From Ginglymostoma cirratum (lineage: Eukaryota): a DNA stretch of 64,000 bases. Of this stretch, positions 13,601-50,406 are shown piece by piece. The DNA is taken from assembly GCA_024137785.1 (NCBI GenBank), contig JAHRHZ010000002.1, forward strand, positions 5,614,661 to 5,678,660, read 5' to 3'. Numbering within the stretch: position 1 is the first letter of the stretch; every line of letters begins with the position of its first letter. Below the pieces are notes generated by a model. That model ran no database searches and had not been told where the DNA came from. It saw nothing but the letters and a program-made list of their open reading frames with translations. A program made the position numbers and the translations under genes.

Positions 13601-16600
13601 ATAATTTGGTAAGGAAGGTGCACGGCATGCTTGCTTTCATCTGTCAGGACATTGAGTATAAAAGTTGGCAGTTCATGTTGCAGCTGTTTAAGCCTTTGGT
13701 CAGATGACATTTGGAGTAATGCATGCATTTCTGGTGACCACACCGTAGGAAGGATATGGAAGCTTTGGAGAGGGTACAAAAGAGGTTTACCAAGATGTTG
13801 CCTGGATTAGAGTGTATTAGCTATAAGAAGAAGTTAGACAAACATGGATTCCTTTTGCTAGAGCATCAGAGGCTTGGGGCAATCTGACAGAAGTGTATAA
13901 AATTATGAGAGGTGTGGATAGTTGCAATCTCTTTCCCATGGTGAAAATGTCAAATACTAGGGGACATAGAATTAAGGTGAGAGAGAATAAGTTTAAAGAA
14001 GGTGAACGAGGCTAGTGTTTTTATGCAAAGGATGGTGGGTGCCGGGGGTGGGGGAGGGGGGACGGGGTGCGGGAGGTGGGGTGGTGGTAGAAGCAGATAC
14101 AACAACAAAATTTAAGAGGCTTTTACACAGACAAAGGGAAGGAATAGAGGAATATGGACCATATGCACGCATATGGGTTTAGTTTAGAATGGCATCATAG
14201 AATCCCTACAGTGCATGTAGAGGCCATTCGGCCCACTGAGTCTACACCAACCCTCTGAAGAGCATCCTTTCCCAGCCCCACCCCATCCCACTAACCCTAC
14301 AACTCCCATGGCTAATCCAATTAGCGTGCACAACTGGGGACACTACAGGACAATTTAACATGACCAATCTGTCTAACCTGCACGTCTTTGGACTGTGGGA
14401 GGAAACCAGATCACCCAGCGGAAACCTCACAGGCATGTAAACTCGACACAGGCAGTCACCCAAGGCTGGAATCAAAACTGAGTCCCTGGTGCTGTGAAGC
14501 AGCAGAGCTAACCACTGATCTACAGTGTCACCCTATTGGCACCCTATTGGTTAGCACATTCAATTAATGGCCCTTATGGTCAGCACCAAAATGGTAGACC
14601 AAAGGGCTTGTTCCTGTGCTCTACTGTTTTTACAATCTGACTGTAATAGTGAATGGATACTTGCGTTAGAATATCAATCAAGGTTTGAGGTATGGTCGCG
14701 CGTGATAGAGAAGATGTGTTTAACCATGTGTCCATCATCTCTTTTGGGCTCTGGCTGTGGTTAGGTTTGAACTACCTGCAGTACACCTCGGGCTGTGAGC
14801 TGCTAGAGGACGGGACAGTCACTGGAAAACGGCATTACGCCTTCAACGGGCGAGAGCTGATCAGCTTCGACCTGGAGCACAGCACCTGGGTTGCCGTCTC
14901 CCCTTATGCGGAGTCTACCCAGAGAAAGTGGAACAGCAATGCAGGTGACAATGAGTACAAGCGATACTACACAAAGAAGATTTGCATCGAGTGGTTAAAC
15001 AAGTACCTTCGTGAAGGTGCTGCAGTACTGAATCGCAAAGGTAGGTCAGACCCGAACTGTGCTGTCACAAGGCAGCCATAAAATCCATGGAAATCGCTCT
15101 CCTGCATGCTCACGCCATGCAGAGACAAAACCTAGCTTGCTCAGGCACAGTGCAGACATCATTGCAGCTGGGTCAATACAAGATCCACACACACAGGGCA
15201 GAGAGTTCAGGGAACAGAGGCCGCCCCCCCCAGGTCAATATACAGGGCACAGAGCATGACACAACAGTGTACACAGTGCACAGCACAAAACAGTCTACAC
15301 AGAGCACAATAAATGTGTACACAGAGCATAGAGCGCAGTAAATGTGTGCACAGGGCATGGAGCACTGGACACAGCACAGTACACAGGGCACGGTGCACAG
15401 TACACAGCACAGTACAGAGGGCACGGTGCACAGTACACAGGGCATGGTGCACAGTACACAGCACAGTACAGAGGGCACGGTGCACAGTACACAGGGCATG
15501 GTGCACAATACACAGCACAGTACACAGGGTACTGTGCACAATACACAGGACAAAGTACACAGGGCATGGAGTACAATACACAGCACAGTACACATGGTAT
15601 GGAGCACTGCACACAGCACAGTACNNNNNNNNNNACACAGCACAGTACACATGGTATGGAGCACTGCACACAGCACAGTACGCATGTCACATAGCACAAT
15701 ACTGTACACAGGTCACAGAAAACAGGCAACAGTGTACAGTGCACAGCCCATAGCACAGCACACTGAGCTTGACTCCGGTTTCTCTCAAGGCTGGCTCTCT
15801 CAGGGAGGAGCAGGAAAATCCCAGAGCTGTTAGTAAGCTGGAAACAGGCAAACGCTGCCAAACTGCATCAAGGTGAAAGCAGTACTGAGGATGGCTAGAG
15901 GCTCTGGTGGTAAATTTACTGATTTGCCAAGAGTACGGGACTTGATTAAGCCTCTCACATAGACTGATCCCCAAGACTGTACTCTTCATTACACCAGAGT
16001 TGCAGGCAATATTAGAAACTAAAACCAGTCAGAGGGAGCCATTACAGTTAAAGTGAATGTCTCTTTCTCTCTCACTCTCTGTCTCCCCCTCTCTTTTTCA
16101 GCTGTCCCGGAGGCAAACGTCTATTACACGAATGGGCATAATGTCAACCTGCACTGCCTGGTCACCGGATTTTACCCACAATCAATCAATGTGACCTGGT
16201 TTGCAGACGGAAAGCCAGTCCCTGATACCCATAGCACAGGGATTCTACCCAACCACGATGGCACCTACCAAATAAGGGTAGTTTTCCAGATCGAACGTGA
16301 CGATGGCCGTAACTACGTGTGCCGTATTGAACACAGCAGCCTGCCTGCACCGAAGGAGATACTGTGGGGTAAGAGATGGGACTGACCCATGGGCTCCGAA
16401 TGGGAATACACTGGGGAACGGATGGGGATAACCCAGTATCAAAAACGAGAATGAAGTCAGGATCAGAAATCGGTGCAAGTGGGCGTAAAGCATGAGAGTA
16501 AGTTGGGATAAGTGATCGGAATGCAATTGGGTGAGGAATGGTGGGAGTCCGGGGAAAGGAATGGGAATGTAATAGAATAGGAATGTGGATCATCAAGAAT

Positions 16601-19600
16601 AAAGAATGGAGTGGTGTAGGGGGTAGTGTCCCTGTCTTTGAATCAGAAACCCCAGGTTTGATTCTCACTCTGGGAGATGGCAGTCCTGGAAGATGTTCAT
16701 TTTTAAACAATTATTTATTCATTTACAGGATGTGGGCATCACTGGCTAGTGCCACAGCATTTACTGCCCATTTCTGATTGTCCAAACCCATCTCTGATTA
16801 TCCAAATGGGTAGTTAAGAGTCATTGCTGTGGCACTGGAGTCACATGTAGGCCAGACTGGGATAGGATGACATTTTCTCTCCCTTAAGGAGCATTGTTGA
16901 ACCAGGTGGCTTTTTCCCTGACAACAGTTTCATGGTCACCATTAGACTCTTTATTCCAGATAGTTATTGAATTCAAAGTCCACCATCTGCCGTGGTGGAA
17001 TTAGAACCCCGGTTCCCTGGTCATTAGTTGAGTGTCCTGGATTAACAACCTAGCAATAATACCACTAAACCATTGCCTCCTCTCATGACTCGGTGTGCAG
17101 TCTTTGTGAGGAACATCTTGGTGCCAACAGCGTAGAGTTTGATCTTTGTCCCAGCTCAGCAATCTTCTTGGAGGGATATGGACTGGCCACAGGCAGGTGG
17201 GACTAGTTTAGTTTGGGATTATGTTCAGCACGGACTGGTAGGAGTGAAGGGTTTGTTTCTGTGCTGTGTGACACTATGACTCGAAGGAATGGGAATAGCT
17301 CAGGAGGAGAAGAATTAGAAATAGCCAGGGATTAGGAATGCCAGGAAGCAATGGGAATAAGAATGCAATAGGAGCAACCTGAATGGAAAGATTGGTTTCC
17401 ACGATGAGGAGATTAGGAGTGATTTTCCTGGGTCATATTCAGATTAAGCTGAAGGGATCCTTGCATGCGCTGGGAGAAGAGAAACATAGCTTTATTGTTC
17501 ACTTTTCCTGCAGTTTCCTGACTGCTAAGAGTCTGAATGTTCTCAGCAGTTAACGTCCTTGTCATTGTCTGAACTGCAAAAATATTTACCCTCTGAGGAC
17601 ACACCCCTGCCTCAGCTGCCCTTTGAACTCTCTGCAACTCTCCCACCCCTTTGCATTGGGACGCTGATCCTTCTGCATCACTGTCCCATTCAGTGTCATC
17701 TCCATCCCTTAGAATGGCCTTAGGCTCCCTCAGAACCTACTCCTGGTGTGTGCTGGGTGATTTTTGAGGACTCCCATAGCTCAAGGGCATTTGACCCATT
17801 ACTTCTCTCCTGGATAGCTGCAATGATGGCTAGAGCTGCAGAGGCCAGAGGAGAAGAAGGTTTAGCCATTCCACTGGGTTGGGACATTTCAGGCTGGGAT
17901 GAGGGCATCAGGGGCTGAGACTCAATGTGTTCCTTTATTCTTTCAGAGAAAGATGGCGGTGTGGTACCAGTGGTGATTGGCTGTAGCATTCTGCTTTTGC
18001 TGTTAATTTTCTGCATCGGAGCTGGCGTTTACTACTGGAAGCACAAGGATGAAGTGAACAAAAGAGTCACCATCTGCATGGGTCATGGTGAGAGTTATGA
18101 TTTATTGATCTCCATTCATCCGTCACAGTCATCGCACAACATTTTGCAGTTGGTTTAATGGGAACCAGTTTAAAGCAAAGCCCCGCGGTTTCAGGACACT
18201 CGTAAAGACCTTTCCAATGGGAATAATGTGGTTATGCAGAAATCAGAGCAGTGAGTTAATACACAGCAAGATCCAATTAACGGCGATTGACCAAACAATC
18301 AGCTGTCATACACACTGTTGAGGTATCAATACTACCCACAATGCATAGTGACATGTGCCCACTCTCCCCATTTGGAGTGTGCCTCAGGCTAATGACTCAT
18401 CCAAAAAATGGCCTCTTTAGAAAATGTACCTCTACCTTGCTGCAGCCGTTCAAATACTCTGCCACTGCCACAATTCGACACCTCTAGCAAAGAAGCGTTC
18501 CCTCAGCATGCACCCACTGACAGTGCGGCGCTCCCTCTGTACTGACCTGCCGATGGTGCAGCGCTTGCTCCGTACTGACCTGCCGACGGCGCGGCGCTCC
18601 CTCAGTACTGGATATCCTCACTCTCCAAATCCCTGTTTGTTTCAGTCATTTCCATTGCCTGTGTTAGCAACTCCAACAAAAGCAATCCCTAAACAATTTC
18701 ACCCAATCATTTGAAAAAAAAAAAGAATGCTGGAAATCACAGTGGGTCAGGCAGCAAGCTGATGTGTCGATTCTCGATGACTCTGATGAAGAGCTATTTA
18801 GCCTCGAAATGTTAGCTTTCTGTCTCTTCATGGATGCTGCCGGACCTGCTGTGATTCCCAGCATTTTTTGTTTTTAGTAAGTTTTCAGCATCTGCAGTAA
18901 TTTGCTTCTTCACCCAGCCATTACTCTGACTTACCACATGACAAATCCAATTGCTGACGAAGCTTGTCAATGATTTCACGATCTTCACGCCAATATCTTG
19001 ATGACTGAGGCTGTGCGTTTTTTATTTCTTTAGGGTCTATGGCAAGTAACTCTTCAACAAGCAGTGAGTATATTCGGAATGGATTGAATTCTAATGCAAT
19101 TATTTGTAAAGTCTGTTCTGGGGAATGATTGGCAGTGCCAGTCTGATTCATCACAGTACATCTCAAATCTAAGGGAGCATTGGGAAGTTTCTGGGGAGTG
19201 CTGGAAGAGAAGGGACTGAGAAGAGACAGACAGATAAGAGAATGTGGAGCTTTTGCCATGTCCTGTTTGCTGACTGAAGATGCACTGACAGTGAATACAG
19301 AATTCCACAATGAGTTTCCGTCTTCTCCCGCGTTGCTCAGGGAATGCACTGAGTTGGTTGGCTTTCTCCCAAAATCACTGCGATGGCAGGATGGCAGTCT
19401 GAACACCTTCCCTGTGATGGACAAGTATCTTGTCTTGGTTTCTAGATCAATGCTTTGGTGTGGCCTGAAGAGCTTCCCATGGTGGACAGATATCTGCACA
19501 CTACCTAGATCAATGGACTGGCATGGTCTACACAGCTCCCTATGCCAGACAGATATCTGGACTGGGTTTATAGATCAATGCACAAGTACGGTCTGCACAG

Positions 19601-34784: not shown

Positions 34785-36150
34785 CTTTAAACGTCAAGTT
34801 TTCCTGCTCCTATGATGCTGCTTGACCCACGCTGGTTACTTTCGGAATGAATTCTTTCAGGTGGACAGTGCCAGACTCGGTGATGGGGACAGACAGGAAA
34901 GAGCACTCCAGTAAAACCACTGAGGCTTTGATGGGCGATGTCGTTGCCGTTCCTTGGGCAGGTAGCAATCCTTTTTCGGTATCCTGTCGGCAAGCTATCA
35001 CAGGAAGCTACTGTCGTTAACTCCGTTCTCCCTTCTCCGGCCAAATGTTGATGTTGCATACATCTCTCCGCGGACTGATGTCACCCACCAATGGGGAAGT
35101 CACACGGAACTGATGTTTTGATGGGCTTTAGGTCAGGATGAGTAGCTTCCCCTCCCTGTTTCCTGTGCTGGTGAAGTCTCTAATGGGAGACCTGGTCACA
35201 CTTGGAGGGAGTGAGTGCCTTGAGGCTGGTTACTTCAGACACACTGACGCCCCGGAAGAGTTTCCCTAGGGCTGCTGCTGACGACCAGGCAGTCGGCAGC
35301 AGGTATTCAGGTGCACGGGTAGGACTCCAGGTGTCGATCCTGGTGTAGTTGCAGATGTAGTTTCCAGTGTGTCTCCTGGCGTAGTTCCCTGCGTAATCCC
35401 TGGTGCTGCTGTTCCAATTGTAGATTTTACTGTAGTACCTGGATTTGATTTGCCGTCTGATTTCTAGTGTTGGTTTCCAGTGTAGCTCCTGGTATCTCTC
35501 CTAGTATAGTTCCCTGTGGGTAAGTCCTGGTGTACTTCGCTCTGGGAAATTCCAGATATTCCTGTACCTGGTGTAGCTGCTAGTGCAGCTCCAAGTGTCT
35601 CTCCTGGTGGCAGCTCCCAGTGTCGCTCCTGTACTGCTGGTCACAGTTTGGAGAATGGAGAGTTCGAAGAGATGCGCAATGATTCTGCATTTGACTGCGT
35701 TGTCTCTCCTCACTGCAGCTGGAGCCCATGCTGGTAAGGACGGACATTCCTGGTTGGGGTGGTGGGGAATGAATGAGCTGGTGCTGGTAGCGGTCACTCA
35801 CCCGCGGACCGAGTGAAATATCTTTGCCGCTCTACGAAGTCTGCGTGACGAGTTGAGGGATTGAAATCCTGTCTCACAATCCTCTCACAAGAGTGCGGGA
35901 TAAACACAAGCAAACTCTCAAATCGTAAGTTGCGAGCAAACTGCTCATTTCGTGCCCAACGGGGTCAACTTCGCAAATAAAACTCCAGCGAAGATGCCTC
36001 CGCAGAGTCCTTCACTGAGAGACGATCAGCACAGACAGAGAGAGTGAGAGGCAGAGATAACACAGTGTGCAGCTGGATGAACACAGCAGGCCGGGGGGCA
36101 TCAGAGGAACGGGGAAGTTGACGTTTCGGGTCGGGACCCTTCTTCAGAAG
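34785..36150 (-). mobile_element. Decayed 5' part of a Penelope-like element
   Basis: Hammerhead-bearing terminus at 36055-36150. Degenerate ORF-start similarity, an internal low-complexity repeat and VPITESGTVHLKEFIPK resembling the PLE LPL.E.E.SVL..GL.FIP motif. Inverted terminal fragment at 34785-34830. Confidence 0.45.
36120..36147 (-). ncRNA. Minimal hammerhead ribozyme motif
   Basis: Reverse complement CTGAAGAAGGGTCCCGACCCGAAACGTC, with a 5-bp stem II GGGTC/GACCC. Confidence 0.65.
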
Positions 36151-36159
36151 CGTCGCGAC

Positions 36160-37940
36160 TGACAGAGTGCTGCACTGTCAGAGGGTCAGTACTGAGGGAG
36201 TGCCGCACTGTCAGAGGGTCAGTACTGAGGGAGCGCCGCACTGTCAGAGGGTCAGTACTGAGGGAGTGCCGCACTGTCAGANNNNNNNNNNGGGAGTGTC
36301 GCACTGTCAGAGGGTCAGTGCTGAGGGAGTGTCGCACTATCAGAGGGTCAGGACTGAGGGAGTGCCGCACTGTCAGAGGGTCAGTACTGAGGGAGTGCCG
36401 CACTGTCAGAGGGTCAGTACTGAGAGATGGTGCACTGGTCAGAGGGTCAGTGCTGAGGGAGTGCCGCACTGTCAGAGAGTCAGTGCTGTGGGAGTGCCGC
36501 ACTGTCAGAGGGTCAGTACTCAGGGAGTGCCGCACTGTCAGAGGGTCACTGCTGAGGGAGTGTCGCACTGTCAGAGGGTCAGTACTGAGGGAGCGCTGCA
36601 CTGTCAGAGGGTCAGTACTGAGAGATGGTGCACTGTCAGAGGGTCAGTACTGAGGGAGTGTGACATTGTCAGAGACTCAGTAAAAAGGGAGTGCCACGCT
36701 GTCTGAGGGTCAGTACTGAGGGAGTGCCGCACTGTCAGAGGGTCAGTACTGAGGGAGTGCCACACTGTCAGAGGGTCAGTACTGAGGGAGTGCCGCATTG
36801 TGAGAGATTCACTAATGAGATAGTGCTGCACTGTCAGAGGGTCAGTAATGAAGTAGCTCTGTACTGTCAGAGGGTCAGTACTGAGGGAGTGCCGCATTGT
36901 GAGAGATTCACTAATGAGATAGTGCTGCACTGTCAGAGGGTCAGTAATGAAGTAGCTCTGTACTGTCAGAGGGTCAGTACTGAGGGAGTGCTGCACTGTT
37001 AGAAAGTCCTTACCGAGGGAGTGCAGCATTGTCAGATGCCCTGTGCTGTGGGAGCACTGCAGAGACACATAGAAAGTACTGATGAGGTGCTGCTCTGTCA
37101 GAGGGTCAGTACTGAAAAATCCGCATGATCAGCGGGTCAATACTGAGGGAGTGTCTCAATCTCTGTGGGTCAGTATTGAGGGAGTATCTCACTCCCAGAG
37201 GATCACTACCATTGGAGCACTGCACTGTCAGAGCATCAACACTGAGGTAGCACTGCATTATTCTCGGGTTAATACCAAGGGAATGCCACCCTCTTAGAGG
37301 ATCAGTACTGAGGGAGTGCTGCATGGTCAGAGGGTCAGTACTGACAGATTGCCACGCTGAAAGAGGGTCAGTACTGACGGAGTCCAGTGGTGCTCCAACA
37401 TCAATACCAAGGGAATGCTGCACTGTTACATGTTCAGTACCAAGGGAATGCCGCACTGTCAGAGGGTCAGTACGGAGGGAGTGCTGCACAGTCAAGGGTC
37501 CGTGCTGAGAGATGCTGCAATGTGAGAGGGTCAGTACTGTACGAGTACCACACTAGCAGTAGATAAGTACTCAGGGAGCACTGTACTGTCAGAGAGTCAT
37601 TAAGGAGGGAGTTCTGCACTCTGAGAGGGTTAGTACTGAAGGAGTGCAGCAGTGTCAAGAGATCAGTACTGAGGAAGCTCTGCACTGACAGCAGGTCAGT
37701 ACTGTGGGACCACTGTAGAGTTAGAGGGTCAGTACTGCGGAAGAGCCGCACTGTCAGGGTAAGCACTGAGGGAGTGCTGTACTGTCAGTGTGTCAGTACC
37801 AGGGAGCACTACACTGTCAGAGGGTCAGTACTAGGGAGCACTACACTNNNNNNNNNNCAGAGGATCAGTACAAGGGAGCACTACACTGTCAGAGGGTCAG
37901 TACTGAGGGAGTGCCGCAATGTCAGTGGGTCTGTACTGAG
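36160..37940 (-). repeat. 33-bp satellite array (CACTGTCAGAGGGTCAGTACTGAGGGAGTGCCG)n, two assembly gaps
   Basis: Direct tandem units; the 33-nt unit gives spurious repetitive ORFs. Confidence 0.95.
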
Positions 37941-38301: not shown

Positions 38302-41300
38302 GTGACCACACTGGGGACTGATGTAATGACTAATGGGGAAGTGACAGTGATATCCTTAAGGCTAGCTCAGCAGAGTTGGATATATTTCAGGACATGGGTC
38401 TAACCACATATTCTGTTCTGCCTGAAGTTCCACAGTGACCTGGTTCTTGTTTGGCTGGGTGCGCATTGGACTCAGTAAATAACCTGGGAATTCTGGCCTG
38501 GCCCTGAGTGACAAACACGGTGGGGAAAAAGAGGGAGAGCCTTCGTGTATAATCAGGTCTTACTCATATATAATGGGGCTGATTAGCTCAGTTGGCTAGA
38601 TAGCTGGGTTTGCAATACCAGAGAAACACCAACAGTGTGTGTTCAGCTCTTGCGCCCGCTGAGGTCACTGCTGCCTAACTGCACCCCTTCTCTCTCGATT
38701 TATTTCTGAGCTCCTTTTCCCCTCCCCCATTTCTGAAGAAGGGTCCTGACCTCAGACGTCAGCTTTCCAGATGTTGCCTGGCCTGCTGTGTTCCTCCAGC
38801 TCCACACTGTTCTATCTCTAACTTCACCCCATACGTGAGGCATGGTGACTGTCAGGTTAAAACACTACCAATTTCTCTCTAATGAGAGAGTAGTCCTCTG
38901 TGACTTTACTGTAGTTTATTAGTCATACAGATGATGAGTCTCTTTCTACCTTATTGCTGACTGTGGGTGTTTGGTGAATGGGATTTGGCTTCCTCTTTCC
39001 AATATTACAACCATGAAGGCACTACAAATTCTTTGGATAATACTTAGGATAATCCTGAAGTGTTGAGAAAGAGGCATAATCGAGTTTGGAAATGCTGACA
39101 TTTCATTCATAAGCATCACAGGTTTAAATTCTCATGATTCATACATTCGGATTACATGCCTCAGGTCAAATGGTCAGGCCTAGCTACTGGATCAAAGGCC
39201 TCAAACTCAGGCCTCTCTGATGCACCATTCAGCTGCACTTAAAGTTTCACCCAATCTCACTGCTTCAATGTGGTTCTAACCCATGGCCCATTCTTCAGTC
39301 TCTCCTTTGGAGGGGGACAGATTCTAGACAGCCCCGTGCTTGATTGCTTCAGGATGATGATGGTGTTTTTATATGTATATGTGTGTGTGTGCATGTGTGT
39401 GTGTGTGTGCCTGTTTATGTGTGTGTCTGTGTCTGTGTGTGTATATCTGGGGTGGGGGTGTTGCAGTGTCAATTCCGATTTCTGTATTCCTCCCCCTTCC
39501 CCCGAGGCATTTCTATAGGCATCCAGGGGCATCAAGTTCAAATTCAACCTCCAACCAGAGAGGTCCCTCTCTCAACATCCTGCCTGTAGGGGACATTCAG
39601 AACCCAGACCCAAACTGCACCCCTAGCCACCCCTCATTCTCCTGTTTCAACTGGAGGGACAATCATGGGCATTTGGTGAGACAATGCCTGGAAAACAGTC
39701 AGCTCTTTTAATCTCCCTGTCTAAGGCATCATTGCAAGGAAGATCCCAGAGAATTGGCCTATGATAAGAAATTGAGTGAATTGCGATCATATTCTCTGCA
39801 GTTCCAAAGAATTAGAGGTGACATGAGTGTCCTATCAGGATAATACTGACAGCCATGCCTGGGGAAACTAAAGCACACAGACTAGGATAAAGGGGTTGAT
39901 TGTTTATGACTGAAATGAGGAGAAATGTTTTTCTTCATAGAGGGTGGTGAATTTTTGGAATTCTCTGGCCCAGACAGTTGCAGGTGCTCCATTCTCTTTG
40001 AGGTCTGAGACAAACAGAGTTTTGAGCTTTCAGGAAATCGAAGGTGAAGGGGACAGGCTCAAAGGGCAGGAAGGCTGTCTCCAGCTCCTATTACCTGAGC
40101 GTTCATTTCTTGCCCATTTTCCTGAAGGTGAGGGTGTCAAAGGCAGATCAGGGCCTGAGGCCAGCAGGTAGGGGCCGTGGGGGTGCTCTGTCCCTCATTC
40201 ACGGTCCTTGTGTGTGACTTCCCCTCAGGCTCCCACACCTTGCAGTATCTCTTCATCTACGCCCCCCAGCATCCGGACCTGCCAGAGCTCTCTATGAGTG
40301 GGATGTTGGATGATCTTCAGATCGAGTACTATGACAGCTCCCTCAAACAGATCCAGCCCAGACAGCAATGGATGGCCAGCAAGATCACGGAAGATTACTG
40401 GCAGGAACAGAACATGGCTGTAGACGCACTTCAAAACCACATCTTCAGGAAAATTGCTCCATTGGTCACAATACTTGGTATGTCACATTGGTCCTAGTGC
40501 GCCGTTGTATGTCAAAATGGAATTCGGTTGACACTAATGTATCAAGGGTATAAACTGACATGGGGCAGTGACCGACGGTTCTTCACCTTTTCAGTTTCCT
40601 AATTGTGAAAGGAAATATGGTAACAACAACTTGTATTTATGTAACAGCCCTAATTTGATTTGATTGGATTTATTATGGTCACATGTACCTAGGTACTGTG
40701 AAAAGTTTTGTTTTGCGTGCAGTGCAGGCAGATCTTAACATAAAAGAGAGCAAGGAATGCAATGTTACGCCTGCAGACAATGTGCGCAAAGAGCAAGGTC
40801 AAAGTTAAATTCAGAAGTCTAATAATGGTCTTCAATATACTAAATGTCCTAGAGGCCATTCAGCCCATCAAGTCTGCACTGATCCTTTGAGGAGCATCTC
40901 ACCCAGACCCAGACCCCTACCGTGTTCCCATAACCACACGTTTCTAATACCTAATCCACTTAGCCTGCATATCCCTGGAAACTACAGGGCATTTTGCACA
41001 GCCAATCCATCTAACCAGCATATTTTTAGGCTGTGGGAGGAAATCCGCACCTACATGGGGAGCATGTGCAGACTTCACCACAGAGAATCACCCCAACCTG
41101 GAATTAGACTTGGGTCTCTGGTGCCATGAGGCACCAGTGCTAACCACTGAGCCACCATGCTTCACAGGAGGGGCAGCAAACAAAACTTGACAATGAGTTG
41201 TCATACTTTTGTCAAAGCATCACTTTGAGGAAGAATCTTAAAGGAGAAAAATGAGGTAGAGAGGCAGAGAAGGAGATGGAAGGAATTTCAGAACTTGGGC

Positions 41301-44300
41301 TCATGGGCCATTGAAGGTGCTGTCACCAGTAATGGAGCGATTGTGATCAGACATGCTCAAAAGCCCAGAAGGGTCTGAATCTAGTACCAGAGCATTGTAG
41401 GTAAAAATGAGAGGTCGGCTATTTAGACAGATATGAGGAAAAAGTGTTCTTCTCCGAGGGTTGTGAGTCTTTGGTATTCTCTTCCACAAAATAGTTCAGT
41501 TAGAAATGTGGGTGTTGAGCAATATAATTGAGCAATACAGGGAAAGAAAATGTGCGAAAAAGGTTGACAGCCCTCCAGGTTGAAAAGTTGCCAGGCCCAG
41601 ATGGGATTCTTCAAAATAGCTGGGAGAGGTAAGAGAGCAAATTGTGGAGCCATCGTCAGAAATTTTCCAGGCCTCTCTGAACACAAAATTCGACCTGGGA
41701 ACTGAAGGATTGCAAATGTGACACCATTGTTTCAGAAAGGGTCAAAGAATAACCAAGGAAACTATAGACCTGTCAACTTGACATCAATAGTGGGAAAAAT
41801 AACAGAAGCCATTGTATGGGGTAAGATAATTATACACTTAGAAAAAATTAACTCAATACTAGGCTAACTTAATACTACCTTGTCAAGGGCAATTCATGTC
41901 TGGCAAATGAACTGAGTTCTTTGGTGAGGTGACACAGGCAGTGGATGAGGCTAATGCTGTGGATGTTGTACATTTTGACTTTCAGAAAGCATTTGATATG
42001 ATGCCACATGGCAGGTTGGGTAGCAAATTAGAAACGTTTGGGATTGATGGATTCTTGGCAGAATGGATTAGAAGTTGGCTAAAAGGCAGAAAACAGAGGA
42101 TTGGTGTAGATAGGCATTTTTCAGTTTGGAGATGAGTTGAAAATGGTGTTCCCCAGAGACTGATGTTAGGAAACTTGCATTTTTCGATTTATGTAATTGG
42201 TTCAAAGATGGGTGTTGAAGACAAAGTCACTCAGTTTGATGAAACTAAGCTAGGGAGAATAGTGAATTGTGAGGATGATGTCGTGTGACTTTGTAGAGAA
42301 TTTGACAAGTTGGCCAAATGGGCAAACACCTGGCAGAAGAATTTCAATGCAGACAATTTTGAAGTAATGCATTTTGGTAGAAGAAACATGGAGACACAAT
42401 ACAGACTAAATAGTACAACTTTGTGGGGAGTACAGGAGTAAAGGGACCTCAGGGTTCACATGCATAATGCCCTGAAGATGACCAGGCAAGTTGTAACAGA
42501 TGTTAAGAAGGCTTATAGGATCCTTGTGTTTATTATTGGAGACATAGAGTGCAAAAGCAAAGAAGTGATGCTCCATCTCTACAAATCATTGGTCAGACTA
42601 CATTTTGAGTATTGGGTTCAGTTCTGGACATCTTATTTAATGAAGTATGTTAAAGCTCTCAAGAGAGTATGCAAAGGAGATTTATTAGAATGATAACAGG
42701 ATTGAGGGATTTTAGATACAAAGAAATATCAGAGAGATTGGGCTTATTTTCCTTGGAGCAGAGAAGATAAAGATGCAATTTTATTGAGGTATTCAAAATT
42801 ATGACCAATTTAAGAAGGATATTCTGTTTTCAATAGTCACACCAATAGTGGTATGTCAGCAACTTCAAGGTGGTCAGGAGGGGAGCTAGGAGTAAGATGT
42901 GGAGAAATTTCTTTACACAGAGAGTTCTTAGGATTTGGAATGCACTACCTGGGAGAGTGGTGGAAGTGGATCCCTTCTGAGGTTTCAAAAGAGAGCTGGA
43001 TATATGTTTGAAAGTGATGAATTTATGGAATCATAGAATCCCTACAGCGTGGAAGAAGGCTATTCAGCCCTTTGAGTCCACACAAATCCTCCGAGGAGCA
43101 TTACAACTGGACTCAACACCCTAACCCAGCCCCGTAACCCTGCATTTCCCATGGCCAATTCACCTAACCTGTACATCTTTGGATTGTGGGAAGAAACCTG
43201 AGCACTCAGTGGAGACCCACGCAGACATAGGGAGAATGTGCAAACTGCACATGGACAGTTGCCCAAGGGTGGAATCAAACCTGAACCCACGGTGCTGTGA
43301 GACAGTAGTGCTAACTACAATTTAGAGGGCTAGGACTGAAGAATAGACTAGCTGGGTAACTTTTTCAATGGGTTGAACAGCCTCCTTTTGTGCACTGTAA
43401 AAATTTATGACAGTAAAAGTCAATGGATGAAAAATCCTTCAATTTTTTTAAGGCAGAGATTGATAAATTCTTGGGTACCAAGGGAATCGGGGTGTACGGG
43501 AACGTAGAGTTGAGGTTAAAATCAGATTGGCCATGATCTTATTGAATGGCAGAGTGGGCTTGAAAGGGCCCAAGTGGCCTACTGGTGTTCCTTCCTCATA
43601 TGTTTGTAATAAATGAGGTTTGATTTCTCTGACATGAGACAGAAACAGACAAACGCCACTTGAGAACAAAAGAGAAATTTTAACAAGTAATTGCCCGACC
43701 AGGAGCCAGAGTGTATCAGCATGGAATAAGGTCGTGATTAGAGACAGGATTTCCTGCCCATCAAGACATACTTGCCTCTTCAAGAGTTCCCTTAAAAGTC
43801 ACAACCTTGATCAATCTGATCTAATATCTCCCACTGTGTTTCAGTGCTAACCTTTGGGTTATAATTTCCCTGCGCAGCTCCTATGTGGTATATGAAAGAT
43901 GTTTAGCACTTCAATGGGAATAGGATAGATCGAGTAGGAGCTTGGTCTGCTGGATAAAATGAACTCCGAGACGCCGTTAGGTGCAGTTTGGCGAGACCAT
44001 AGAGAAACAGTACATCCGCAGCCTCTCGTCAATTCTGTATCGCTCATTGCCGCATACCGTACACCATACATTTACACATGATGGGTTAGGGGCTCCACCT
44101 AATACAGACATGAATGGACAGATCTATCATTAATGCCTAGTTGATCTTCTTGATCATTCGCAGGTATCCGATACATCCAGGTCCTTTGGAAATGCACAGT
44201 GGAAAATAGCCAAAACACCACAGCGTTTGTAAAGCTAAACGTCCATGGGCTTGGAGTTGTTGATTGTAACTTGTTCACAGTGCGTTGCAGGGGGCTTGGT

Positions 44301-47300
44301 GTGTTTTCTGTTCTGATTGGAATGGTTGAAGATATCCTCAAGAATGATCCCACTTTTATCCAGTTGCTGAATCCCAGATGTGTTGAAAACCTCCAGACAG
44401 TACTTCGAGCTGGTAAAACAGCCCTGGAAAGAAAAGGTAAGTGGAACAGTACAGTCAGACGCTGAGACTGACCTGGACCTTGACGCTGAGTGTGATCGGG
44501 ATCAGGATTCCGACTGTAATGCAAAACCGATTTCCGAGTGTGATCCAATTTCTGGGTGTGATACAAATTTGATTTCCCAGTGTGATCTGGATTCTGATTG
44601 TGATCCATATCCGATTTCTGAGTGTGGTCCGGATTCTGATTTTGAACCAATCCAGTTTCTTGTGTTATCCCCGGATCTGAAGTCTGAGTGTGTTCCTTGT
44701 CCAGATTCTGGCTGCGAACTAAATCCCAGTTCCGAGTGTGATCTGGATCTGAATTCTGAATGTGATCCGTTGGGTGAACATTGCATTAACTTTCAAAAAT
44801 AGAGTGCCTTTCACTTTTGCTTCTGGTTCTTCCTCAGTTACTCCCCAGGTACTGGTTTTCGAAAGGAGCTCCACTGCGGAGATGTCCACACCTCTCCTGT
44901 GCCTCATCACTGCCTTTTATCCCCGCACCATCAATGCCACGTGGCTACGTAAGGGAGAGCCTGTCTCAGAGGACCTTACAGTGATGGTTCTGCCAAACCA
45001 TGATGCCACGTACAGAATGGAGATCCTCATTGACATCAAGAACAATGACCCAAGCAACTACTACTGCCAGGTTCAGCACTGTAGCTTGCCTGAGGCACTG
45101 AGAGTAACATCGGGTAAGGTATCACACAACAATATTGCTCCAAAGATGGCCACTTGAGTCATGTTGCCTGTGAAAGACTAATCCAACTCGACCAGCTCCT
45201 TCCATGCTTATTCTTGCTTGCGCATTTTTCCCTTTAACCATATCTAATTCCTTTTTGAAAGTCATCTGCTTCTTACACAATTTTATTCCTGAACACAGCA
45301 ACACGTTGTGAAAATAAACAAAAATCTTCTCATCTCTCCTGTGCCCTCTTAGCAGATCATTTTTAAGCTGTGTCCTCTGGCCAGCAATTCTCCTGCTAAT
45401 GCAGGGGGAAGAATTTTTTTTTTAAATTCCTGATAAGTTGTCAGTTGATGAAATAGAGGGAGAGAGCTGGAAAAAGCTTGGAAAAATGTATAGATGAGCT
45501 AAGGGCTAACTTTCACGATTGACCAATGGCAGACTGCGGAGTCATTGAAATTAAACAACAAACACAGTAGCTTATTGGCCAGAGATAGTTAAGAGCTGCC
45601 GATGCTGGAGTCAGAGATAACTCAGTGTGGAACTGGAGGAACACAGCAGGCCAGGCAGCATCAGAGGAGCAGGAAAGCTGACATTTTGGCTTAGGGCACT
45701 TCTTCAGAAATGGGGAGACGGGAGGAAGCTCAGACATAGAGATTGGAGGGTGGGGCTGGGGAAGGTAGATGGAATGGTGATAAGCAAGTGCAGGTAGGCA
45801 GTGGTGGGGATTAGTCAGTGAGGCGGGGAGAGCGGATAGATGAGCAAGAAGATGCACAGGTTGTGTCAGTTCGAGTAGATGGGGGTGAGAGGGAGGGCTG
45901 GTCATGGGATGAGGCTGGGGATGGGGAGATTTTGAAACTGGTAAAATCCACATTTAGGCCATTGGGCTGTAGGATCCCGAGGTGGAATACGAGGTGGTGC
46001 TCCTCCAGTTCCTAGGTGGCGTCATTGTGACACATGAGGAGGCCCAGGATGGATGTGTCACCCAGGGAGTGGGAGGGGGAGTTGAAGTGGTTCGTGACCA
46101 GAATGTATTGCTCTACAAAGCAGTCTCTGAGCCTCCACTTGGTCTCACCGATGTAGAGGAGGCCACAGCGGGAGCAAGGGATGCAGTAGGCCAAGTTGAC
46201 GATGTGCATGTGAACCCCTGTTGTTTGTGGAAGGTTTGTTTGATGCCTTGAATGGAGGTGAGGGGGGAGGTTTAGGGGCTAGCACTGCTGCCTCACAGTG
46301 TCAGGGACCTGGGTTCAATTCCAGGGTGTGTGTGTGGAGTTTGAACATTCTCCCTGTGTCTGCATGGGTTTCCTCTGCATGCTACAGTTTCCTCCCACAG
46401 TCCAAAGATGTGCAGGTCAGGTGGATTGGCCATGTGAAATTGCCCTATAGTCAAGGGATGTGCAGGCTAAATGGGTTAGCCATGGTAAATGCAGGGTTAC
46501 AGGGATAAGGTAGGGAGGTGGGTCTGGGTGTGATGCTCTTTGGAAGGTCCTTGTGTACTTGATGGGCAGAATGGCCTGTTTCAGTGCTGTAGGGATTCTA
46601 TAATTCAATTCTAGTGTTCAAATAGCCGTTTATAGGTCTGCTGTGTTCAGGCCTTCATTTCTTCATTTCAGAAGGTATAGGGGGTTGGTTTAATTGAGGT
46701 GATGTAGTTCAGATTGTACATTTTGGTTTTCAAAACACATGGCCAATCCACCTGACCTGCACATCTTTGGACTGTGGGAGGAAACTGTAGCATGCAGAGG
46801 AAACCCATGCAGACACAGGGAGAATGTTCAAACTCCACATAGTCACCCAAGGGTGGAATTGAACCAGGACCCTTGTTCTGTGAGGCAGCAGTGCTAGCCC
46901 CTACACCTCCCCACACACCTCTATTCAGCCCACATCCCGTGCCTTGTTCCCCTTCCTCTGAGTTCCAAGGAACCAAGAGATTGCAACAGCAGCTGTTGGT
47001 TGAGGAACTGGATGGAGTTGCACAAAGAGGAAGGATGTGGAGGCTTTGGGGAGGGTACAGAAGACGTTTACCAGGATGCTGCCTGGGTTAGAGCATACGA
47101 GCTATAAGGAGAGGTTTTCAAAAGGAATTGGACAAAAGATCTGTTTCTGTGCTGTATTACTCTATAAATGGGTTTCTTCAACTTAAAAGTGCCACAGGTT
47201 GAAAGAACTAGAGACAGAGAATAAAAAAACGTGATAACCAGCGAGGTTGGCATAGGTTAGAGTATTGCGGACAATTCAAGGTGCTTCAAGGAGAATATAA

Positions 47301-48527
47301 GACTTTAGAAAGGATACAAAGGAGATTTATTAGGGAAAAGGGACAATGGATTATGAAGAGAAACCGGGAATGTCAGGATGGTACACCTTGAAACAGTGAA
47401 GGTCATATAGGTCACAGTGTAGGTGATGACTTATAATGAAAGCAAAATATTGCAGATGCTGGAGATCTGAACTAAAAACTGACAATGCTCGAGAAACTCA
47501 GCAGGTCTGGCAGCTGCTGCAGAGAGAGACACAAAGTTAGCATCTTGAGTCTGGTATGGCTCTTGTTCAAACCTGAAAGCTGTTGTAAAAAAGTTTACAT
47601 GTTGATGTTATTGACGGAAGCAGAGGAAGACCAAGGGGGTCAGAGGCCTAATGCAAAAGACAGAGGGTTGTTAAGAGTGTGTAAAAGAAGACATGTAAAA
47701 TGGGGGTAAATTGAGGTGTGAAGGAAAGAGAACGGGTGGTCTCTACTAACTGCAAAGTAAACAAGACACAAACACAACTTGGCTGTTGGGGCAGAGTTGG
47801 GAGAATGCAAGAAAAATGGAAGATACCCATGCTGCGGTCAGTTACTGAAGTTGTTGAATTCATTATTGAGATCAGCAACCTTGAATGCAGACATTCTGAC
47901 CCCCAACCCTTAATTCTGATGACCACTGGTTGACAAACCTAGCAGAGGGATTTTAATGGCACGGGAGAGTAAAACAGCTGGGTAAAGCCCTCGCCTCTCA
48001 AAAGCTGCTTCCCAGCCTGCTCTCAGCCTCCCCCACAACCCAAGGACCCACCTAGCTTTTAGCCAAAGTTTGCCAATACTCAAAGGAATGCCATTTCACA
48101 CAGGAATTGTGTTCCTTAAAGGTGAATCCCACTGGGAACTGATGGGGAACCCAAGACGAATCACTCTCAAACTCACTGGGATGATTCTCATGTCAGGCAG
48201 ACTTATGGAAATCGACAAACCCATTGGAAGTTGTCCATTTCAACGGCCCCAAATCAATGCAAAAGGAAGTGCAACCAGGGTGAATAACTGGGAGGCGTTG
48301 TGAGCAGTCACTCAGTATCTAATGCTGGCAAAATCAAACGCCCTGTGGTTTGGGCTGTGGGGAAAGATGTGTGTGTGTATGTGGTTGTATTTCACCGTCA
48401 CTCTCCTTTAATGGTCTGTGTGTGTTGTATCCGGCATGCAGGAGTTGGTCGTGTAAGTCACAGTATTTGCCCTGGCCCAATGCTGTGCCTATTCACTGTG
48501 CTGGCAATAGTGACAGGCGTGGCGTAG
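38190..48527 (+). CDS. Divergent nonclassical MHC class I gene B (CD1-like hydrophobic groove, possibly shark UFA lineage; putative GPI anchor); join(38190..38301,40229..40477,44164..44436,44838..45113,48442..48527), ~331 aa
   Basis: The alpha1, alpha2 and alpha3 exons have phase-1 GT-AG borders and are open. The leader and last coding exon are inferred. The joined CDS is 996 nt and in frame. Confidence 0.8.
40229..40477 (+). CDS. Gene B alpha1 exon
   Basis: cccctcag|GC; GSHTLQYLF...LPELSMSGMLDDLQIEYYDS...PRQQWM...DYWQEQ...; CTT G|gtatgt. 83 aa, no N86 sequon. Confidence 0.93.
41570..43030 (+). mobile_element. CR1 LINE ORF2 fragment (intron 2 of gene B)
   Basis: NYRPVNLTSIVGK, DFQKAFD, LYKSLVRLHFEY.VQFW. 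Confidence 0.85.
44164..44436 (+). CDS. Gene B alpha2 exon
   Basis: ttcgcag|GT; IRYIQVLWKCTV...RCVENLQTVLRAGKTALERK G|gtaagt. C101/C164 spacing and the ...L.RK end are typical of alpha2. Confidence 0.88.
44480..44770 (+). repeat. Degenerate (TCCGAGTGTGATCCGGAT)-type repeat filling the short alpha2-alpha3 intron of gene B
   Basis: Recurrent GAGTGTGATC with 6n periodicity, which gives spurious Cys/Asp-rich ORFs. Confidence 0.75.
44838..45113 (+). CDS. Gene B alpha3 IgC1 exon
   Basis: tcctcag|TT; LLCLITAFYPRTINATW...LPNHDATYRM...YYCQVQHCSL; TCG G|gtaagg. Confidence 0.95.
45590..46270 (-). mobile_element. Penelope-like 3' fragment (GIY-YIG)
   Basis: ORF 46012-46209 CSRCGLLYIGETKWRL, plus a 3' terminus like that at 3680-4100. 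Confidence 0.85.
48442..48527 (+). CDS. Gene B C-terminal hydrophobic exon (GVGRVSHSICPGPMLCLFTVLAIVTGVA*); exon continues to the donor at 48569
   Basis: catgcag|GA in phase 1; TAG at 48525-48527; strong donor CAG|gtgagt after 48569. Next acceptor ttcccag| at 48677 and AATAAA at 49199-49204 suggest a 3'UTR exon. Confidence 0.65.
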
Positions 48528-49529
48528 GGATCAATTTCAACGAAGGCTGTGGGAAAGGCGCGAGCACAGGTGAGTAAAGACCTGCATCCAGGTCTCACAT
48601 CCCGTTCATTATCTAAAAGCAAGTGATAATAAGTGGCAATATTCTATACGTAATCACCTGCTCCTTCTCTTTCCCAGATGAGCATTAATTCCTGCAAGTC
48701 TCTCACCAGCTGCCCAGTACTGAATCGATGACTGAGATGCTGCCAATTGTTTCATGAAAGCAAGCCTGTTTGCAACCGTTTCACTGTCACCTCTAACATG
48801 CTAATTGGCTGGACTTTGTTCTTTTGCATTGTATTATCGCTTTCTAATAGATTTTGAAATGTTTGTTAAGTTTCAGTCTGCGCCTCAGTTCAGTATGAAG
48901 CACCATGAACTTTGAAACCTGACTTCTGTACAGCTTCCTTTTCTTTTCATTCCTGATTTTTTCAATATAATGTCACCACCCCTTGTGGATAGGCCTGTGA
49001 TATCCAGGAATTGATGACAAAATCATTGCTGTGTGCAACTCAAATGAAAAGAACCGGACAGGAATGTTTAAACAAAAGTGATTTTTTTTTGTCATTTGTC
49101 CAACTCCAATTTCCTAACTAAAATTATAGACTCAACAGACACTGGATTGTGAGTCTGGACAATGATCAGACTCAAGAAGTAATCTGCTGCCATACCAAAA
49201 TAAAATGAATATTATAAATTTAATCTGTGACATTTATTGCTGAGATTTTAGTTTGCCATGTTTCTTTCAGAGGGCTATAGTAACACCTTTCAGCTGTGGT
49301 ATATTCCAGTACACTTTACAACCTCTTTTGCAGTGTGGTCACTGTTCTAACAAAGGGACTGAGACAGCCAAATAGTGCACACCAAGTTCCCATAAACAGG
49401 AATTTGCTAATAACCGAAAAATGTTTCTTTTTAGGCGTTGATTATGTAAAATGAACTCCCCTGTTGATCGTCCAAAAGTGCCATGAATATGTTGCACAGG
49501 TGGGACACACAATCCATCTGTATATGCAA

Positions 49530-50310
49530 CACTCCTTCAGTACAAACCCCCTAGCACTGCTGCAGTCCCTGAGTACTGACCATCAAACTATGCAGCACTC
49601 CCTCAGTACTGACCCTCTGACAATGCGGCACTCCCTCAGTAATGACCCTCTGATAGCGCAGCACTCCCTCAGTAATGACCCTCTGATAGCGCAGCACTCC
49701 CTCAGTACTGACCCTGTGACAGTGCTGCACTCCCTCAGTACTGACCCTCTGACAGTGCGGCACTCCCTCAGTACTGACCCTCTGACAGTGCGGCGCTCCC
49801 TCAGTACTGACCCTGTGACAGTGCTGCACTCCCTCAGTACTGACCCTCTGACAGTGCGGCACTCCCTCAGTACTGACCCTCTGACAGTGCTGCACTCCCT
49901 CAGTACTGACCCTCTGACAGTGCGGCACTCCCTCAGTACTGACCCTCTGACAGTGTGACACTTCCTCAGTACTGACCCTCTGACAGTGCGGCACTCCCTC
50001 AGTAATGACCCTCTGATAGCGCAGCACTTCCTCAGTACTGACCCTCTGACAGTGCGGCACTCCCTCAGTAATGACCCTCTGACAGTGCTGCACTCCCTCA
50101 GTAATGACCCTGTGACAGTGCTGCACTCCCTCAGTACTGACCCTCTGACAGTGTAGTGCTCCCTCAGTACTGACCCTCTGACAATGCGGCACTCCCTCAG
50201 TACTGACCCTCTGACAGTGCTGCACTCCCTCAGTACTGACCCTCTGACAGTGCTGCACGCCCTCAGTACTGACCCTCTGACAGTGCTGCACTCCCTCAGT
50301 ACTGACCATC
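49530..50310 (+). repeat. 33-bp satellite array (CACTCCCTCAGTACTGACCCTCTGACAGTGCGG)n
   Basis: About 23 tandem units, opposite orientation to 36160-37940. Degenerate copies at ~5790-6340 and 18500-18610. Confidence 0.95.
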
Positions 50311-50406
50311 ACAGTGGGCATTTTCCTGAACTCAGTTTAGTTGTTATCGTTCGGGAGTTACAATGTTTGACATCACTGAAATGTCACCTAGAGCATTCAA
50401 AATGAT

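What the first reader, a model, noticed from the sequence alone, without database searches (positions are those of the whole stretch)
40229..44436. Gene B has a CD1-like hydrophobic groove that has lost the peptide anchors
Seen (HLA numbering aligned by eye): Y7 and Y59 are kept, but 84=I, T143/K146/W147 are absent (helix reads FSVLIGMVEDILK), Y159=L, W167=N and Y171=V. Floor and helix positions are aliphatic or aromatic (F9, V97, W99, V114, L116, V67, L70, I74, L81). alpha1 is 5 aa shorter than in gene A and lacks the N86 glycan. Known: this pattern is typical of lipid-presenting CD1 and EPCR. Inference: a non-peptide, probably lipid-binding class I in the oldest jawed-vertebrate lineage. It may be the CD1-like UFA lineage reported in sharks or an unnamed one; I cannot tell from sequence alone.
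Basis: partly seen in the sequence, partly recalled or inferred. Interest (0 to 1): 0.8.

Follow-up and report, generated by a model that had tools for sequence, protein, structure and literature searches.

The report
Nurse shark UFA, a known lipid-type class I

Summary
Gene B is an intact five-exon MHC class I gene: leader 35655-35733, alpha1 40229-40477, alpha2 44164-44436, alpha3 44838-45113 and tail 48442-48527.

- **Peptide anchors:** it keeps Y7 and Y59 but has lost the other six peptide-end anchors.
- **Groove:** 26 of 37 groove positions are hydrophobic, against 15 of 37 in neighbouring gene A.
- **Alpha1:** it is 5 residues shorter than in gene A and lacks the glycan site.

The encoded ectodomain matches 263 of 265 residues of PDB 8GM8, titled "Crystal structure of shark nonclassical MHC CLASS I, UFA" (released 2024-11-27, Ginglymostoma cirratum). 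Two papers call UFA CD1-like and lipid-binding, citing unpublished data. I found no primary paper.

New here:
- UFA is one copy per shark species and multi-copy in rays, and its gene tree follows the species tree.
- Its groove hydrophobicity is conserved in 23 elasmobranch sequences.
- Neither sequence nor fold places it specifically with CD1.

The scan had already noted this gene's tail and extra cysteine pair on this window, and a UGA-sister gene 214 kb away.

Verdict: already known.

The parts
35655..35733 (+). Leader (signal peptide) exon of gene B: ATG, 26 codons plus 1 base, GT donor at 35734
   Evidence: tblastn with the leaders of four orthologues all hit 35655-35735; the best was P0008, 55% identity, E 0.015. 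The sequence was read. The split codon with alpha1 gives G, which is residue 1 of the 8GM8 construct.
40229..40477 (+). Alpha1 exon, 249 nt, phase 1; 5 codons shorter than gene A's and without the end-of-alpha1 glycan site
   Evidence: AG/GT borders. 82 of 82 residues identical to 8GM8 residues 2-83. Pfam MHC_I scores 26 bits, below the 28.3 cut-off.
44164..44436 (+). Alpha2 exon, 273 nt, phase 1; keeps the C101/C164-equivalent pair, adds a second Cys pair, and has lost W133, T143, K146, W147, Y159, W167 and Y171
   Evidence: AG/GT borders. 88 of 90 residues identical to 8GM8 residues 85-174; the differences are N119 for D and V138 for I. No Pfam family matches, and no other PDB sequence matches at E<=10.
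44838..45113 (+). Alpha3 exon, 276 nt, immunoglobulin C1-set domain
   Evidence: Pfam C1-set 46.9 bits. 90 of 90 residues identical to 8GM8 residues 176-265.
48442..48527 (+). Tail exon, coding part: short stalk, hydrophobic segment, then TAG at 48525-48527 with no cytoplasmic tail. The exon continues as UTR to the donor at 48569.
   Evidence: Sequence read; translation and split codon. The same tail type is seen in 20 of 22 full-length relatives. This is the subject of scan note s1-879100.

Best explanation
Gene B is the nurse shark (Ginglymostoma cirratum) UFA gene. [quoted passage not shown]

The heavy chain has the normal class I build: leader, alpha1, alpha2, a C1-set alpha3 and a short hydrophobic tail. 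The groove between the two helices has lost six of the eight residues that hold peptide ends. It is lined with aliphatic and aromatic side chains.

The most likely working is CD1-like. The acyl chains of a lipid sit in the hydrophobic groove and the polar head is left at the top for a receptor, probably a T-cell receptor.

- **Shown here:** the gene model, its identity with the crystallised UFA protein, the residue pattern, and its conservation across elasmobranchs.
- **Taken from the literature:** that lipids are bound.
- **Inferred:** presentation to T cells, pairing with beta2-microglobulin, and where the lipid is loaded. There is no cytoplasmic sorting motif, because there is no cytoplasmic tail.
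For: - **Identity with UFA:** 263 of 265 residues match PDB 8GM8 chain A, and all three split codons agree. The 8GM8 title names UFA. The same sequence is filed as G. cirratum.
- **Anchors and groove:** 2 of 8 peptide-end residues are kept, against 8 of 8 in gene A. 26 of 37 groove positions are hydrophobic, against 15 of 37.
- **Conservation:** in 23 shark and ray relatives the equivalents of HLA 70, 74, 95, 99, 114 and 116 are hydrophobic in all. The K146 equivalent is L/F/I in 21 of 23.
- **Gene tree:** it follows the species tree, with one copy per shark species. The shark/ray split has 100/100 support. This fits an old gene under constraint.
- **Literature:** UFA is described as CD1-like in its binding region and maps in the class Ib cluster (PMC10751288). 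Crystal structure and mass spectrometry suggest lipids like those of CD1d (PMC12562908).
- **Fold:** the AF2 model has a class I fold, pLDDT 82.7.
Against: - I could not see the 8GM8 coordinates or ligands, so I did not observe lipid occupancy.
- The two papers cite unpublished data or a personal communication, and I found no primary paper.
- Y7 and Y59, the residues that hold a peptide N-terminus, are kept in most relatives: 16 and 21 of 23.
- The nearest structural neighbours after UFA itself are chicken YF1*7.1, FcRn and classical molecules, not CD1.
- No receptor is known.
Confidence: 0.85

Rival explanations
1. UFA carries a lipid only as a structural filler and works as a ligand or receptor for something other than a T-cell receptor. 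The endothelial protein C receptor, with its bound phospholipid, works this way, and FcRn, HFE and ZAG also use the class I fold for non-presenting jobs.
For: A hydrophobic groove alone does not show presentation. FcRn, HFE and ZAG score about as well as CD1 in the fold comparison (Z 20.5, 19.3 and 18.7, against 19.5 for chicken CD1-1 and 18.8 for human CD1d). The gene is one copy per shark species with low variation: 2 of 265 residues differ between this genome and the crystallised allele. The GPI-type tail lacks any sorting motif.
Against: The published remarks compare the bound lipids with those of CD1d and treat UFA as an antigen-presenting type. UFA keeps a full alpha3 domain, unlike EPCR (Z 13.5, alpha1-alpha2 only). 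Rays have expanded the gene to several copies, which is more usual for recognition molecules.
Confidence: 0.1
2. UFA binds lipopeptides or very hydrophobic short peptides rather than plain lipids. Chicken YF1*7.1 and macaque Mamu-B*098 do this with N-myristoylated peptides.
For: After UFA itself, the best structural matches are the chicken YF1*7.1 entries (Foldseek ranks 3, 4 and 7; Z 20.8-21.3) and Mamu-B*098 with a myristoylated 5-mer (Z 20.6). Y7 and Y59 of the A pocket are kept.
Against: All class I-like chains lie within about one Z unit, so the ranking does not discriminate. The whole C-terminal anchor set (84, 143, 146, 147) is gone. The literature speaks of lipids like those of CD1d.
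Confidence: 0.05

Closest known systems
Nurse shark UFA (PDB 8GM8, released 2024-11-27)
   Same: It is the same gene product. 263 of 265 ectodomain residues are identical, with exon junctions falling exactly at residues 1, 84 and 175 of the construct.
   Different: The window allele has N119 where the crystallised protein has D, and V138 where it has I. The construct lacks the leader and the hydrophobic tail that the gene encodes.
CD1 of tetrapods (lipid-presenting class I-like molecules)
   Same: Both have a hydrophobic groove without the peptide-end anchors, a C1-set alpha3, and reported lipids like those of CD1d. Chicken CD1 gives the best class I-like match in the PDB to the UFA alpha3 exon (57.8 and 57.1 bits). 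It also gives a weak match to the alpha2 family profile (21.6 bits).
   Different: - UFA is below the Pfam CD1-type model cut-off (MHC_I_3 21.6 bits against 35) and scores slightly better on the general MHC_I model (26.8 bits).
- CD1 is absent from the 60 listed PDB matches (of 150) of alpha1.
- UFA has no cytoplasmic tail, hence no tyrosine sorting motif.
- Its alpha1 is shortened and it has an extra alpha2 cysteine pair.
- Fold scores do not set CD1 apart from FcRn, HFE or classical molecules.
Shark UGA (PDB 9CH4, released 2026-03-18)
   Same: UGA is the other shark class Ib described as CD1-like. It is the best non-self PDB match to UFA alpha1 (44.3 bits) and has 27% identity in the structural alignment.
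   Different: It is a separate lineage. The UFA alpha2 exon does not find it at E<=10, and only the family profile does, at 26.8 bits.
Chicken YF1*7.1 (nonclassical class I that binds lipids and N-acylated peptides)
   Same: It is the top structural neighbour after UFA itself, and it has a hydrophobic groove in a molecule that is otherwise class I-like.
   Different: Identity is only 23%, and the Z difference from ordinary classical molecules is under 1. There is no evidence of shared descent beyond the class I family.
Endothelial protein C receptor (EPCR/PROCR)
   Same: A phospholipid-filled hydrophobic groove in an alpha1-alpha2 platform.
   Different: EPCR has no alpha3 domain. Z is 13.5 over 152 residues and the alpha2 profile scores 14 bits, E 0.5.

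Membership tests
MHC class I superfamily | Exon-per-domain gene with phase-1 introns: leader, alpha1, alpha2, alpha3, tail | tested here: met
   All borders are AG/GT, and split codons give G, G, V, G.
MHC class I superfamily | Alpha2 disulfide (C101-C164 equivalents) and a C1-set alpha3 domain | tested here: met
   C94 and C156 are invariant in 23 relatives. C1-set scores 46.9 bits against a cut-off of 21. The AF2 model has a class I fold, with Z 19-21 to many class I chains.
MHC class I superfamily | Pfam MHC_I (PF00129) above the gathering score | tested here: not met
   26.8 bits against 28.3 for the 265-residue protein, and the match covers alpha1 only. The alpha2 exon has no Pfam match. 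22 of 23 relatives match at E<=0.01, so membership is carried by the fold and by the relatives.
Shark UFA lineage | Sequence identity with the protein deposited as UFA | tested here: met
   263 of 265 residues match 8GM8 chain A, whose title names UFA.
Shark UFA lineage | Location in the MHC class Ib cluster with UDA and UEA (PMC10751288) | tested here: inconclusive
   The window holds a second class I gene about 17 kb upstream of gene B's leader. No framework gene lies in the window to show MHC linkage. Scan note s1-879657 places a UGA-sister gene 214 kb away; I did not check that.
Classical peptide-presenting class I | The eight conserved peptide-end residues: Y7, Y59, Y/R84, T143, K146, W147, Y159, Y171 | tested here: not met
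   Only Y7 and Y59 are kept. The others read I, I, V, E, L, V. Gene A keeps all eight.
CD1 | Sequence membership: Pfam MHC_I_3 (PF16497) above the gathering score, or CD1 as the best relative | tested here: not met
   21.6 bits against a cut-off of 35, and only 5 of 23 relatives match at E<=0.01. The alpha2 profile scores fish class I at 29.1, UGA at 26.8 and MR1 at 22.6, all above chicken CD1-1 at 21.6.
CD1 | Deep hydrophobic pockets that hold lipid alkyl chains | not testable with these tools
   The sequence pattern fits and the literature says lipids are bound. Neither the 8GM8 coordinates nor the model coordinates could be inspected.
CD1 | Cytoplasmic tyrosine-based endosomal sorting motif (CD1b, c, d) | tested here: not met
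   The reading frame stops directly after the hydrophobic segment. The same holds in 20 of 22 full-length relatives.
EPCR | Alpha1-alpha2 platform only, with no alpha3 and no beta2-microglobulin | tested here: not met
   UFA has a full C1-set alpha3 exon.

The most novel reading that the evidence does not exclude
UFA and tetrapod CD1 descend from one lipid-presenting gene that already sat in the MHC of the first jawed vertebrates; they are not two independent conversions of a peptide groove. Hints seen here: chicken CD1 is the best class I-like PDB match to the UFA alpha3 exon, it appears among the top matches of the alpha2 family profile, and it has the highest non-self identity (29%) in the structural alignment. 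This idea is already raised in PMC10751288 and PMC12562908, so even if true the credit is not the scan's.
Probability: 0.3. Interest if true: 0.55.

Novelty: already known. Interest (0 to 1): 0.15.

Why it matters
UFA matters for a long-standing question: is lipid presentation as old as peptide presentation? A CD1-like molecule in sharks and rays would put it at the base of the jawed vertebrates. That point has already been made by the groups that found UFA and solved its structure.

This report adds only modest things:
- an exact gene model in this genome;
- two differences from the crystallised allele, both in alpha2, one of them at the K146-equivalent groove position;
- evidence that groove hydrophobicity is conserved across 23 elasmobranch sequences, with one copy per shark species and several in rays;
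- the caution that neither sequence profiles nor overall fold place UFA specifically with CD1.

Tried and rejected
- **Pseudogene or chance ORFs:** rejected. All five exons are open with proper splice sites, the product has been crystallised, and orthologues exist in at least 15 elasmobranch species.
- **Gene A might be UGA:** rejected. Its alpha1 gives only 44.8 bits to 9CH4, and its best match is nurse shark UAA, 6LUP, at 69 bits.
- **An unnamed lineage:** rejected by the PDB title.
- **Primary paper:** seven searches found only two secondary mentions.
- **RNA evidence:** The message describes a filter that also trips by chance.
  - Nothing was laid and no further call was available.
  - The sandbox tblastn used the whole window only as the local subject.
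  - What remains is that a run guessed to be RNA holds 0.58 of the sampled words of 44164-45113, equal to the exonic share of 549 of 950 bases. This is suggestive only.
- **Fold comparison to separate CD1 from other class I-like folds:** not informative, because all lie within 1-2 Z units.
- **Joined spliced protein of the window:** never typed, searched or folded. Exons were searched one by one, and the database protein P0013 stood in for the whole ectodomain.
- **Assembly gaps:** the N runs were left as they are.
Full report
**What is at the coordinates**

The full gene on the + strand is:

| Exon | Coordinates | Note |
|---|---|---|
| Leader | 35655-35733 | ATG, 26 codons plus one base |
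| Alpha1 | 40229-40477 | 249 nt |
| Alpha2 | 44164-44436 | 273 nt |
| Alpha3 | 44838-45113 | 276 nt |
| Tail | 48442-48527 | coding part; stop at 48525-48527; exon runs on to a donor at 48569 |

Every border is AG/GT and every intron is phase 1. The split codons give G, G, V and G. I found the leader by tblastn with the leaders of four orthologues, which all hit 35655-35735. Intron 2 is 3.7 kb and carries a broken reverse-transcriptase fragment (RVT_1 22.7 bits, below the cut-off). The product would be about 320 residues. I did not type, search or fold the joined product. Exons were handled one by one.

**Check of the observation**

I mapped HLA numbering with sequence landmarks: Y7, the YW pair at 59/60, C101 and C164. 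I also used computed alignments to gene A and the secondary structure of an AlphaFold model. The offsets are minus 2 from Y59 to the end of alpha1, minus 7 at the start of alpha2, and minus 8 from about 110 on.

- Y7 and Y59 are kept.
- Position 84 is I.
- 143/146/147 read I/V/E.
- 159 is L, 167 is N and 171 is V.
- F9, V67, L70, I74, L81, V97, W99, V114 and L116 are confirmed.

Alpha1 is 15 nt (5 residues) shorter than gene A's 264 nt and ends without a sequon. Gene A ends alpha1 with NSS.

Gene A (alpha1 9300-9563, alpha2 14765-15040, alpha3 16102-16368) serves as an internal control:

| Measure | Gene A | Gene B |
|---|---|---|
| Peptide-end residues kept | 8 of 8 (R84 form) | 2 of 8 |
| Hydrophobic groove positions | 15 of 37 | 26 of 37 |
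| Mean Kyte-Doolittle at those positions | -0.25 | +1.72 |
| Hydrophobic residues in alpha2 | 32% | 46% |
| Trp and Tyr in alpha2 | 3 W, 8 Y | 1 W, 1 Y |

**Identity**

Each exon was compared with all PDB sequences.
- Alpha1 is 82 of 82 identical to residues 2-83 of 8GM8 chain A.
- Alpha2 is 88 of 90 identical to residues 85-174.
- Alpha3 is 90 of 90 identical to residues 176-265.
- The three split codons supply residues 1, 84 and 175 correctly, for a total of 263 of 265.

The two differences are N119 in the window against D in the construct, and V138 against I.

Foldseek gives the entry title as "Crystal structure of shark nonclassical MHC CLASS I, UFA", released 2024-11-27. It gives 9CH4 as the UGA structure, released 2026-03-18. 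The same 265-residue sequence is in UniRef as an MHC class I protein of Ginglymostoma cirratum (P0013). So gene B is nurse shark UFA, and the window is from that species or a very near relative. The agreement of the construct with my exon junctions also confirms the splice model.

**Literature**

[quoted passage not shown] It maps UFA in the class Ib cluster with UDA and UEA, cites unpublished data, and notes that orthology with CD1 is hard to assess.

PMC12562908 (2025) says UFA and UGA are CD1-like, single or low copy and MHC-linked. It adds that crystal structure and mass spectrometry suggest lipids like those of human CD1d, citing a personal communication.

Seven searches found no primary paper in the library. 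Lipid binding therefore rests on these statements plus the sequence pattern. I could not inspect the deposited coordinates.

**How divergent it is, and who else has it**

The alpha2 exon has no Pfam match and no PDB match other than itself at E<=10. Gene A's alpha2 finds 506 PDB class I sequences. Against 1.84 billion representative proteins, the alpha2 exon finds only two true relatives, from Chiloscyllium punctatum and Cetorhinus maximus.

A word search with the full-length Cetorhinus protein found 25 proteins, 24 of them named as elasmobranch and one unnamed. They come from nine shark species and from rays of the genera Pristis, Hemitrygon, Amblyraja, Mobula and Narcine.

In the alignment of 23 of them:
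- the short alpha1 is shared by all;
- the extra cysteine pair is shared by 21 of 23;
- the stop right after a hydrophobic tail is shared by 20 of the 22 full-length sequences.

The equivalents of HLA 70, 74, 95, 99, 114 and 116 are hydrophobic in all 23. The K146 equivalent is L, F or I in 21. The classical residue never appears at the equivalents of 143, 146, 147, 159 or 171.

The maximum-likelihood tree separates sharks from rays with 100/100 support and follows the species tree. There is one sequence per shark species and several in myliobatiform rays. This is an old orthologous gene under constraint.

**Is it a CD1?**

Functionally it looks like one. By membership it does not pass.

- **Pfam:** on the 265-residue protein, MHC_I scores 26.8 bits (cut-off 28.3) and the CD1-type model MHC_I_3 scores 21.6 (cut-off 35). 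Of 23 relatives, 22 match MHC_I and 5 match MHC_I_3 at E<=0.01.
- **Alpha1 against the PDB:** the best non-self matches are UGA at 44.3 bits, shark UAA at 37.3, fish class I, HFE and MR1. CD1 and EPCR are not among the 60 rows listed, out of 150 matches.
- **Alpha2 family profile (A4):** 29.1 bits to grass carp class I, 26.8 to UGA, 22.6 to MR1, 21.6 to chicken CD1-1, 21.1 to chicken YF1*7.1 and 14.0 to EPCR.
- **Alpha3 exon:** its best class I-like match is chicken CD1, at 57.8 and 57.1 bits, just above MR1 and UGA.

The AlphaFold model (pLDDT 82.7, pTM 0.66) gives these Z-scores against PDB representatives:

| Chain | Z |
|---|---|
| 8GM8 (UFA) | 22.0 |
| FcRn | 20.5 |
| H-2Kd | 20.1 |
| Chicken CD1-1 | 19.5 (29% identity) |
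| UGA | 19.3 |
| HFE | 19.3 |
| Human CD1d | 18.8 |
| ZAG | 18.7 |
| EPCR | 13.5 |

Among all PDB chains, the first after UFA are the chicken YF1*7.1 entries, a lipid and lipopeptide binder. All these values are within one to two units, so the fold does not discriminate.

UFA also lacks a cytoplasmic tail and hence the tyrosine sorting motif of CD1b, c and d. Shared descent with CD1 is neither supported nor excluded. The weak, repeated appearance of chicken CD1 is only a hint.

**Mechanism**

Most likely (0.85 for the whole reading; identity alone about 0.97), the heavy chain pairs with beta2-microglobulin through its C1-set alpha3. Lipid acyl chains lie in the hydrophobic groove and the head group is offered to a receptor.

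- **Shown:** gene model, identity, residue pattern, conservation.
- **From the literature:** lipid cargo.
- **Inferred:** T-cell recognition, the beta2-microglobulin partner, and loading outside the late endosomal route, since there is no sorting motif and the tail looks like a GPI signal.

Rivals:
- A non-presenting role with a structural lipid, as in EPCR (0.1).
- Lipopeptide or hydrophobic-peptide binding, as in YF1*7.1. The kept Y7 and Y59 leave this open (0.05).

**Transcription**

I could not test it properly. The look-up of sequencing runs listed runs of the same organism. One run, guessed to be RNA, holds 0.58 of the sampled words of 44164-45113, which equals the exonic share of 549 of 950 bases. 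DNA-like runs hold up to 0.98.

The message says this is a filter that also trips by chance. Scan note s1-879100 states that the stop codon is seen in mRNA. I did not verify that.

**Verdict**

- **Observation:** confirmed.
- **Interpretation:** supported.
- **Novelty:** already known. The structure was released in 2024, and the lineage was named in print in 2023 and 2025.

The scan had already noted this gene on this same window (the tail, s1-879100; the cysteine pair, s1-879142). It had also noted a UGA-sister gene 214 kb beyond the window (s1-879657).

Noticed in passing
window 9300-18100 (+): alpha1 9300-9563, alpha2 14765-15040, alpha3 16102-16368, transmembrane exon from about 17947: Gene A is an intact class I gene that keeps all eight peptide-end residues (R84 form) and the end-of-alpha1 glycan site. 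Pfam MHC_I scores 60.7 and 65.6 bits. The best solved relative of its alpha1 is nurse shark UAA (6LUP, 69 bits), so it is not UAA itself and not UGA. Its lineage (UDA, UEA or other) was not settled.
   Followed up: partly
window 44268-44270 and 44325-44327: The window allele of UFA differs from the crystallised protein at two alpha2 residues: N119 (AAC) against D, and V138 (GTT) against I. Residue 138 is the K146-equivalent groove position. This could be low-level allelic variation.
   Followed up: partly
window 44260-44290; alignment A3: The extra alpha2 cysteine pair (C118, C125) is present in 21 of 23 elasmobranch UFA sequences. C125 aligns with the W133-equivalent tryptophan of gene A. This is the subject of scan note s1-879142.
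   Followed up: partly
window 48442-48527: The reading frame ends right after a 17-residue hydrophobic segment with no cytoplasmic tail. The same is seen in 20 of 22 full-length relatives, so the C-terminus is GPI-signal-like. This is the subject of scan note s1-879100.
   Followed up: partly
proteins P0014-P0027 (rays) against P0002-P0013 (sharks): UFA is one sequence per shark species but several per species in rays: five in Mobula birostris, three in Hemitrygon akajei and two in Pristis pectinata. Two ray subclades are shared by Mobula and Hemitrygon, so the ray duplication is old.
   Followed up: partly
window 44840-45112 (alpha3 exon): Among class I-like PDB chains, the best matches to the UFA alpha3 are chicken CD1-2 and CD1-1 (57.8 and 57.1 bits). 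They are tied with IgM constant domains and lie above MR1, UGA and classical molecules. This is a weak hint on ancestry and was not resolved.
   Followed up: no
window 36100-37500 and 49460-50320: Long minisatellite arrays of an 11-codon-like unit, which read as STDPLTVRHSL repeats in ORF listings. One lies in gene B's first intron and one downstream of the gene. Two of the window's N gaps (36282-36291 and 37848-37857) lie in or next to the first array.
   Followed up: no
window 41718-42700 (+) and 1933-3795 (+): Broken reverse-transcriptase fragments of retroelements (RVT_1 22.7 and 21.6 bits, both below the cut-off). The first lies inside intron 2 of gene B.
   Followed up: partly
The tool says the filter also trips by chance. 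They were left alone afterwards.
   Followed up: no
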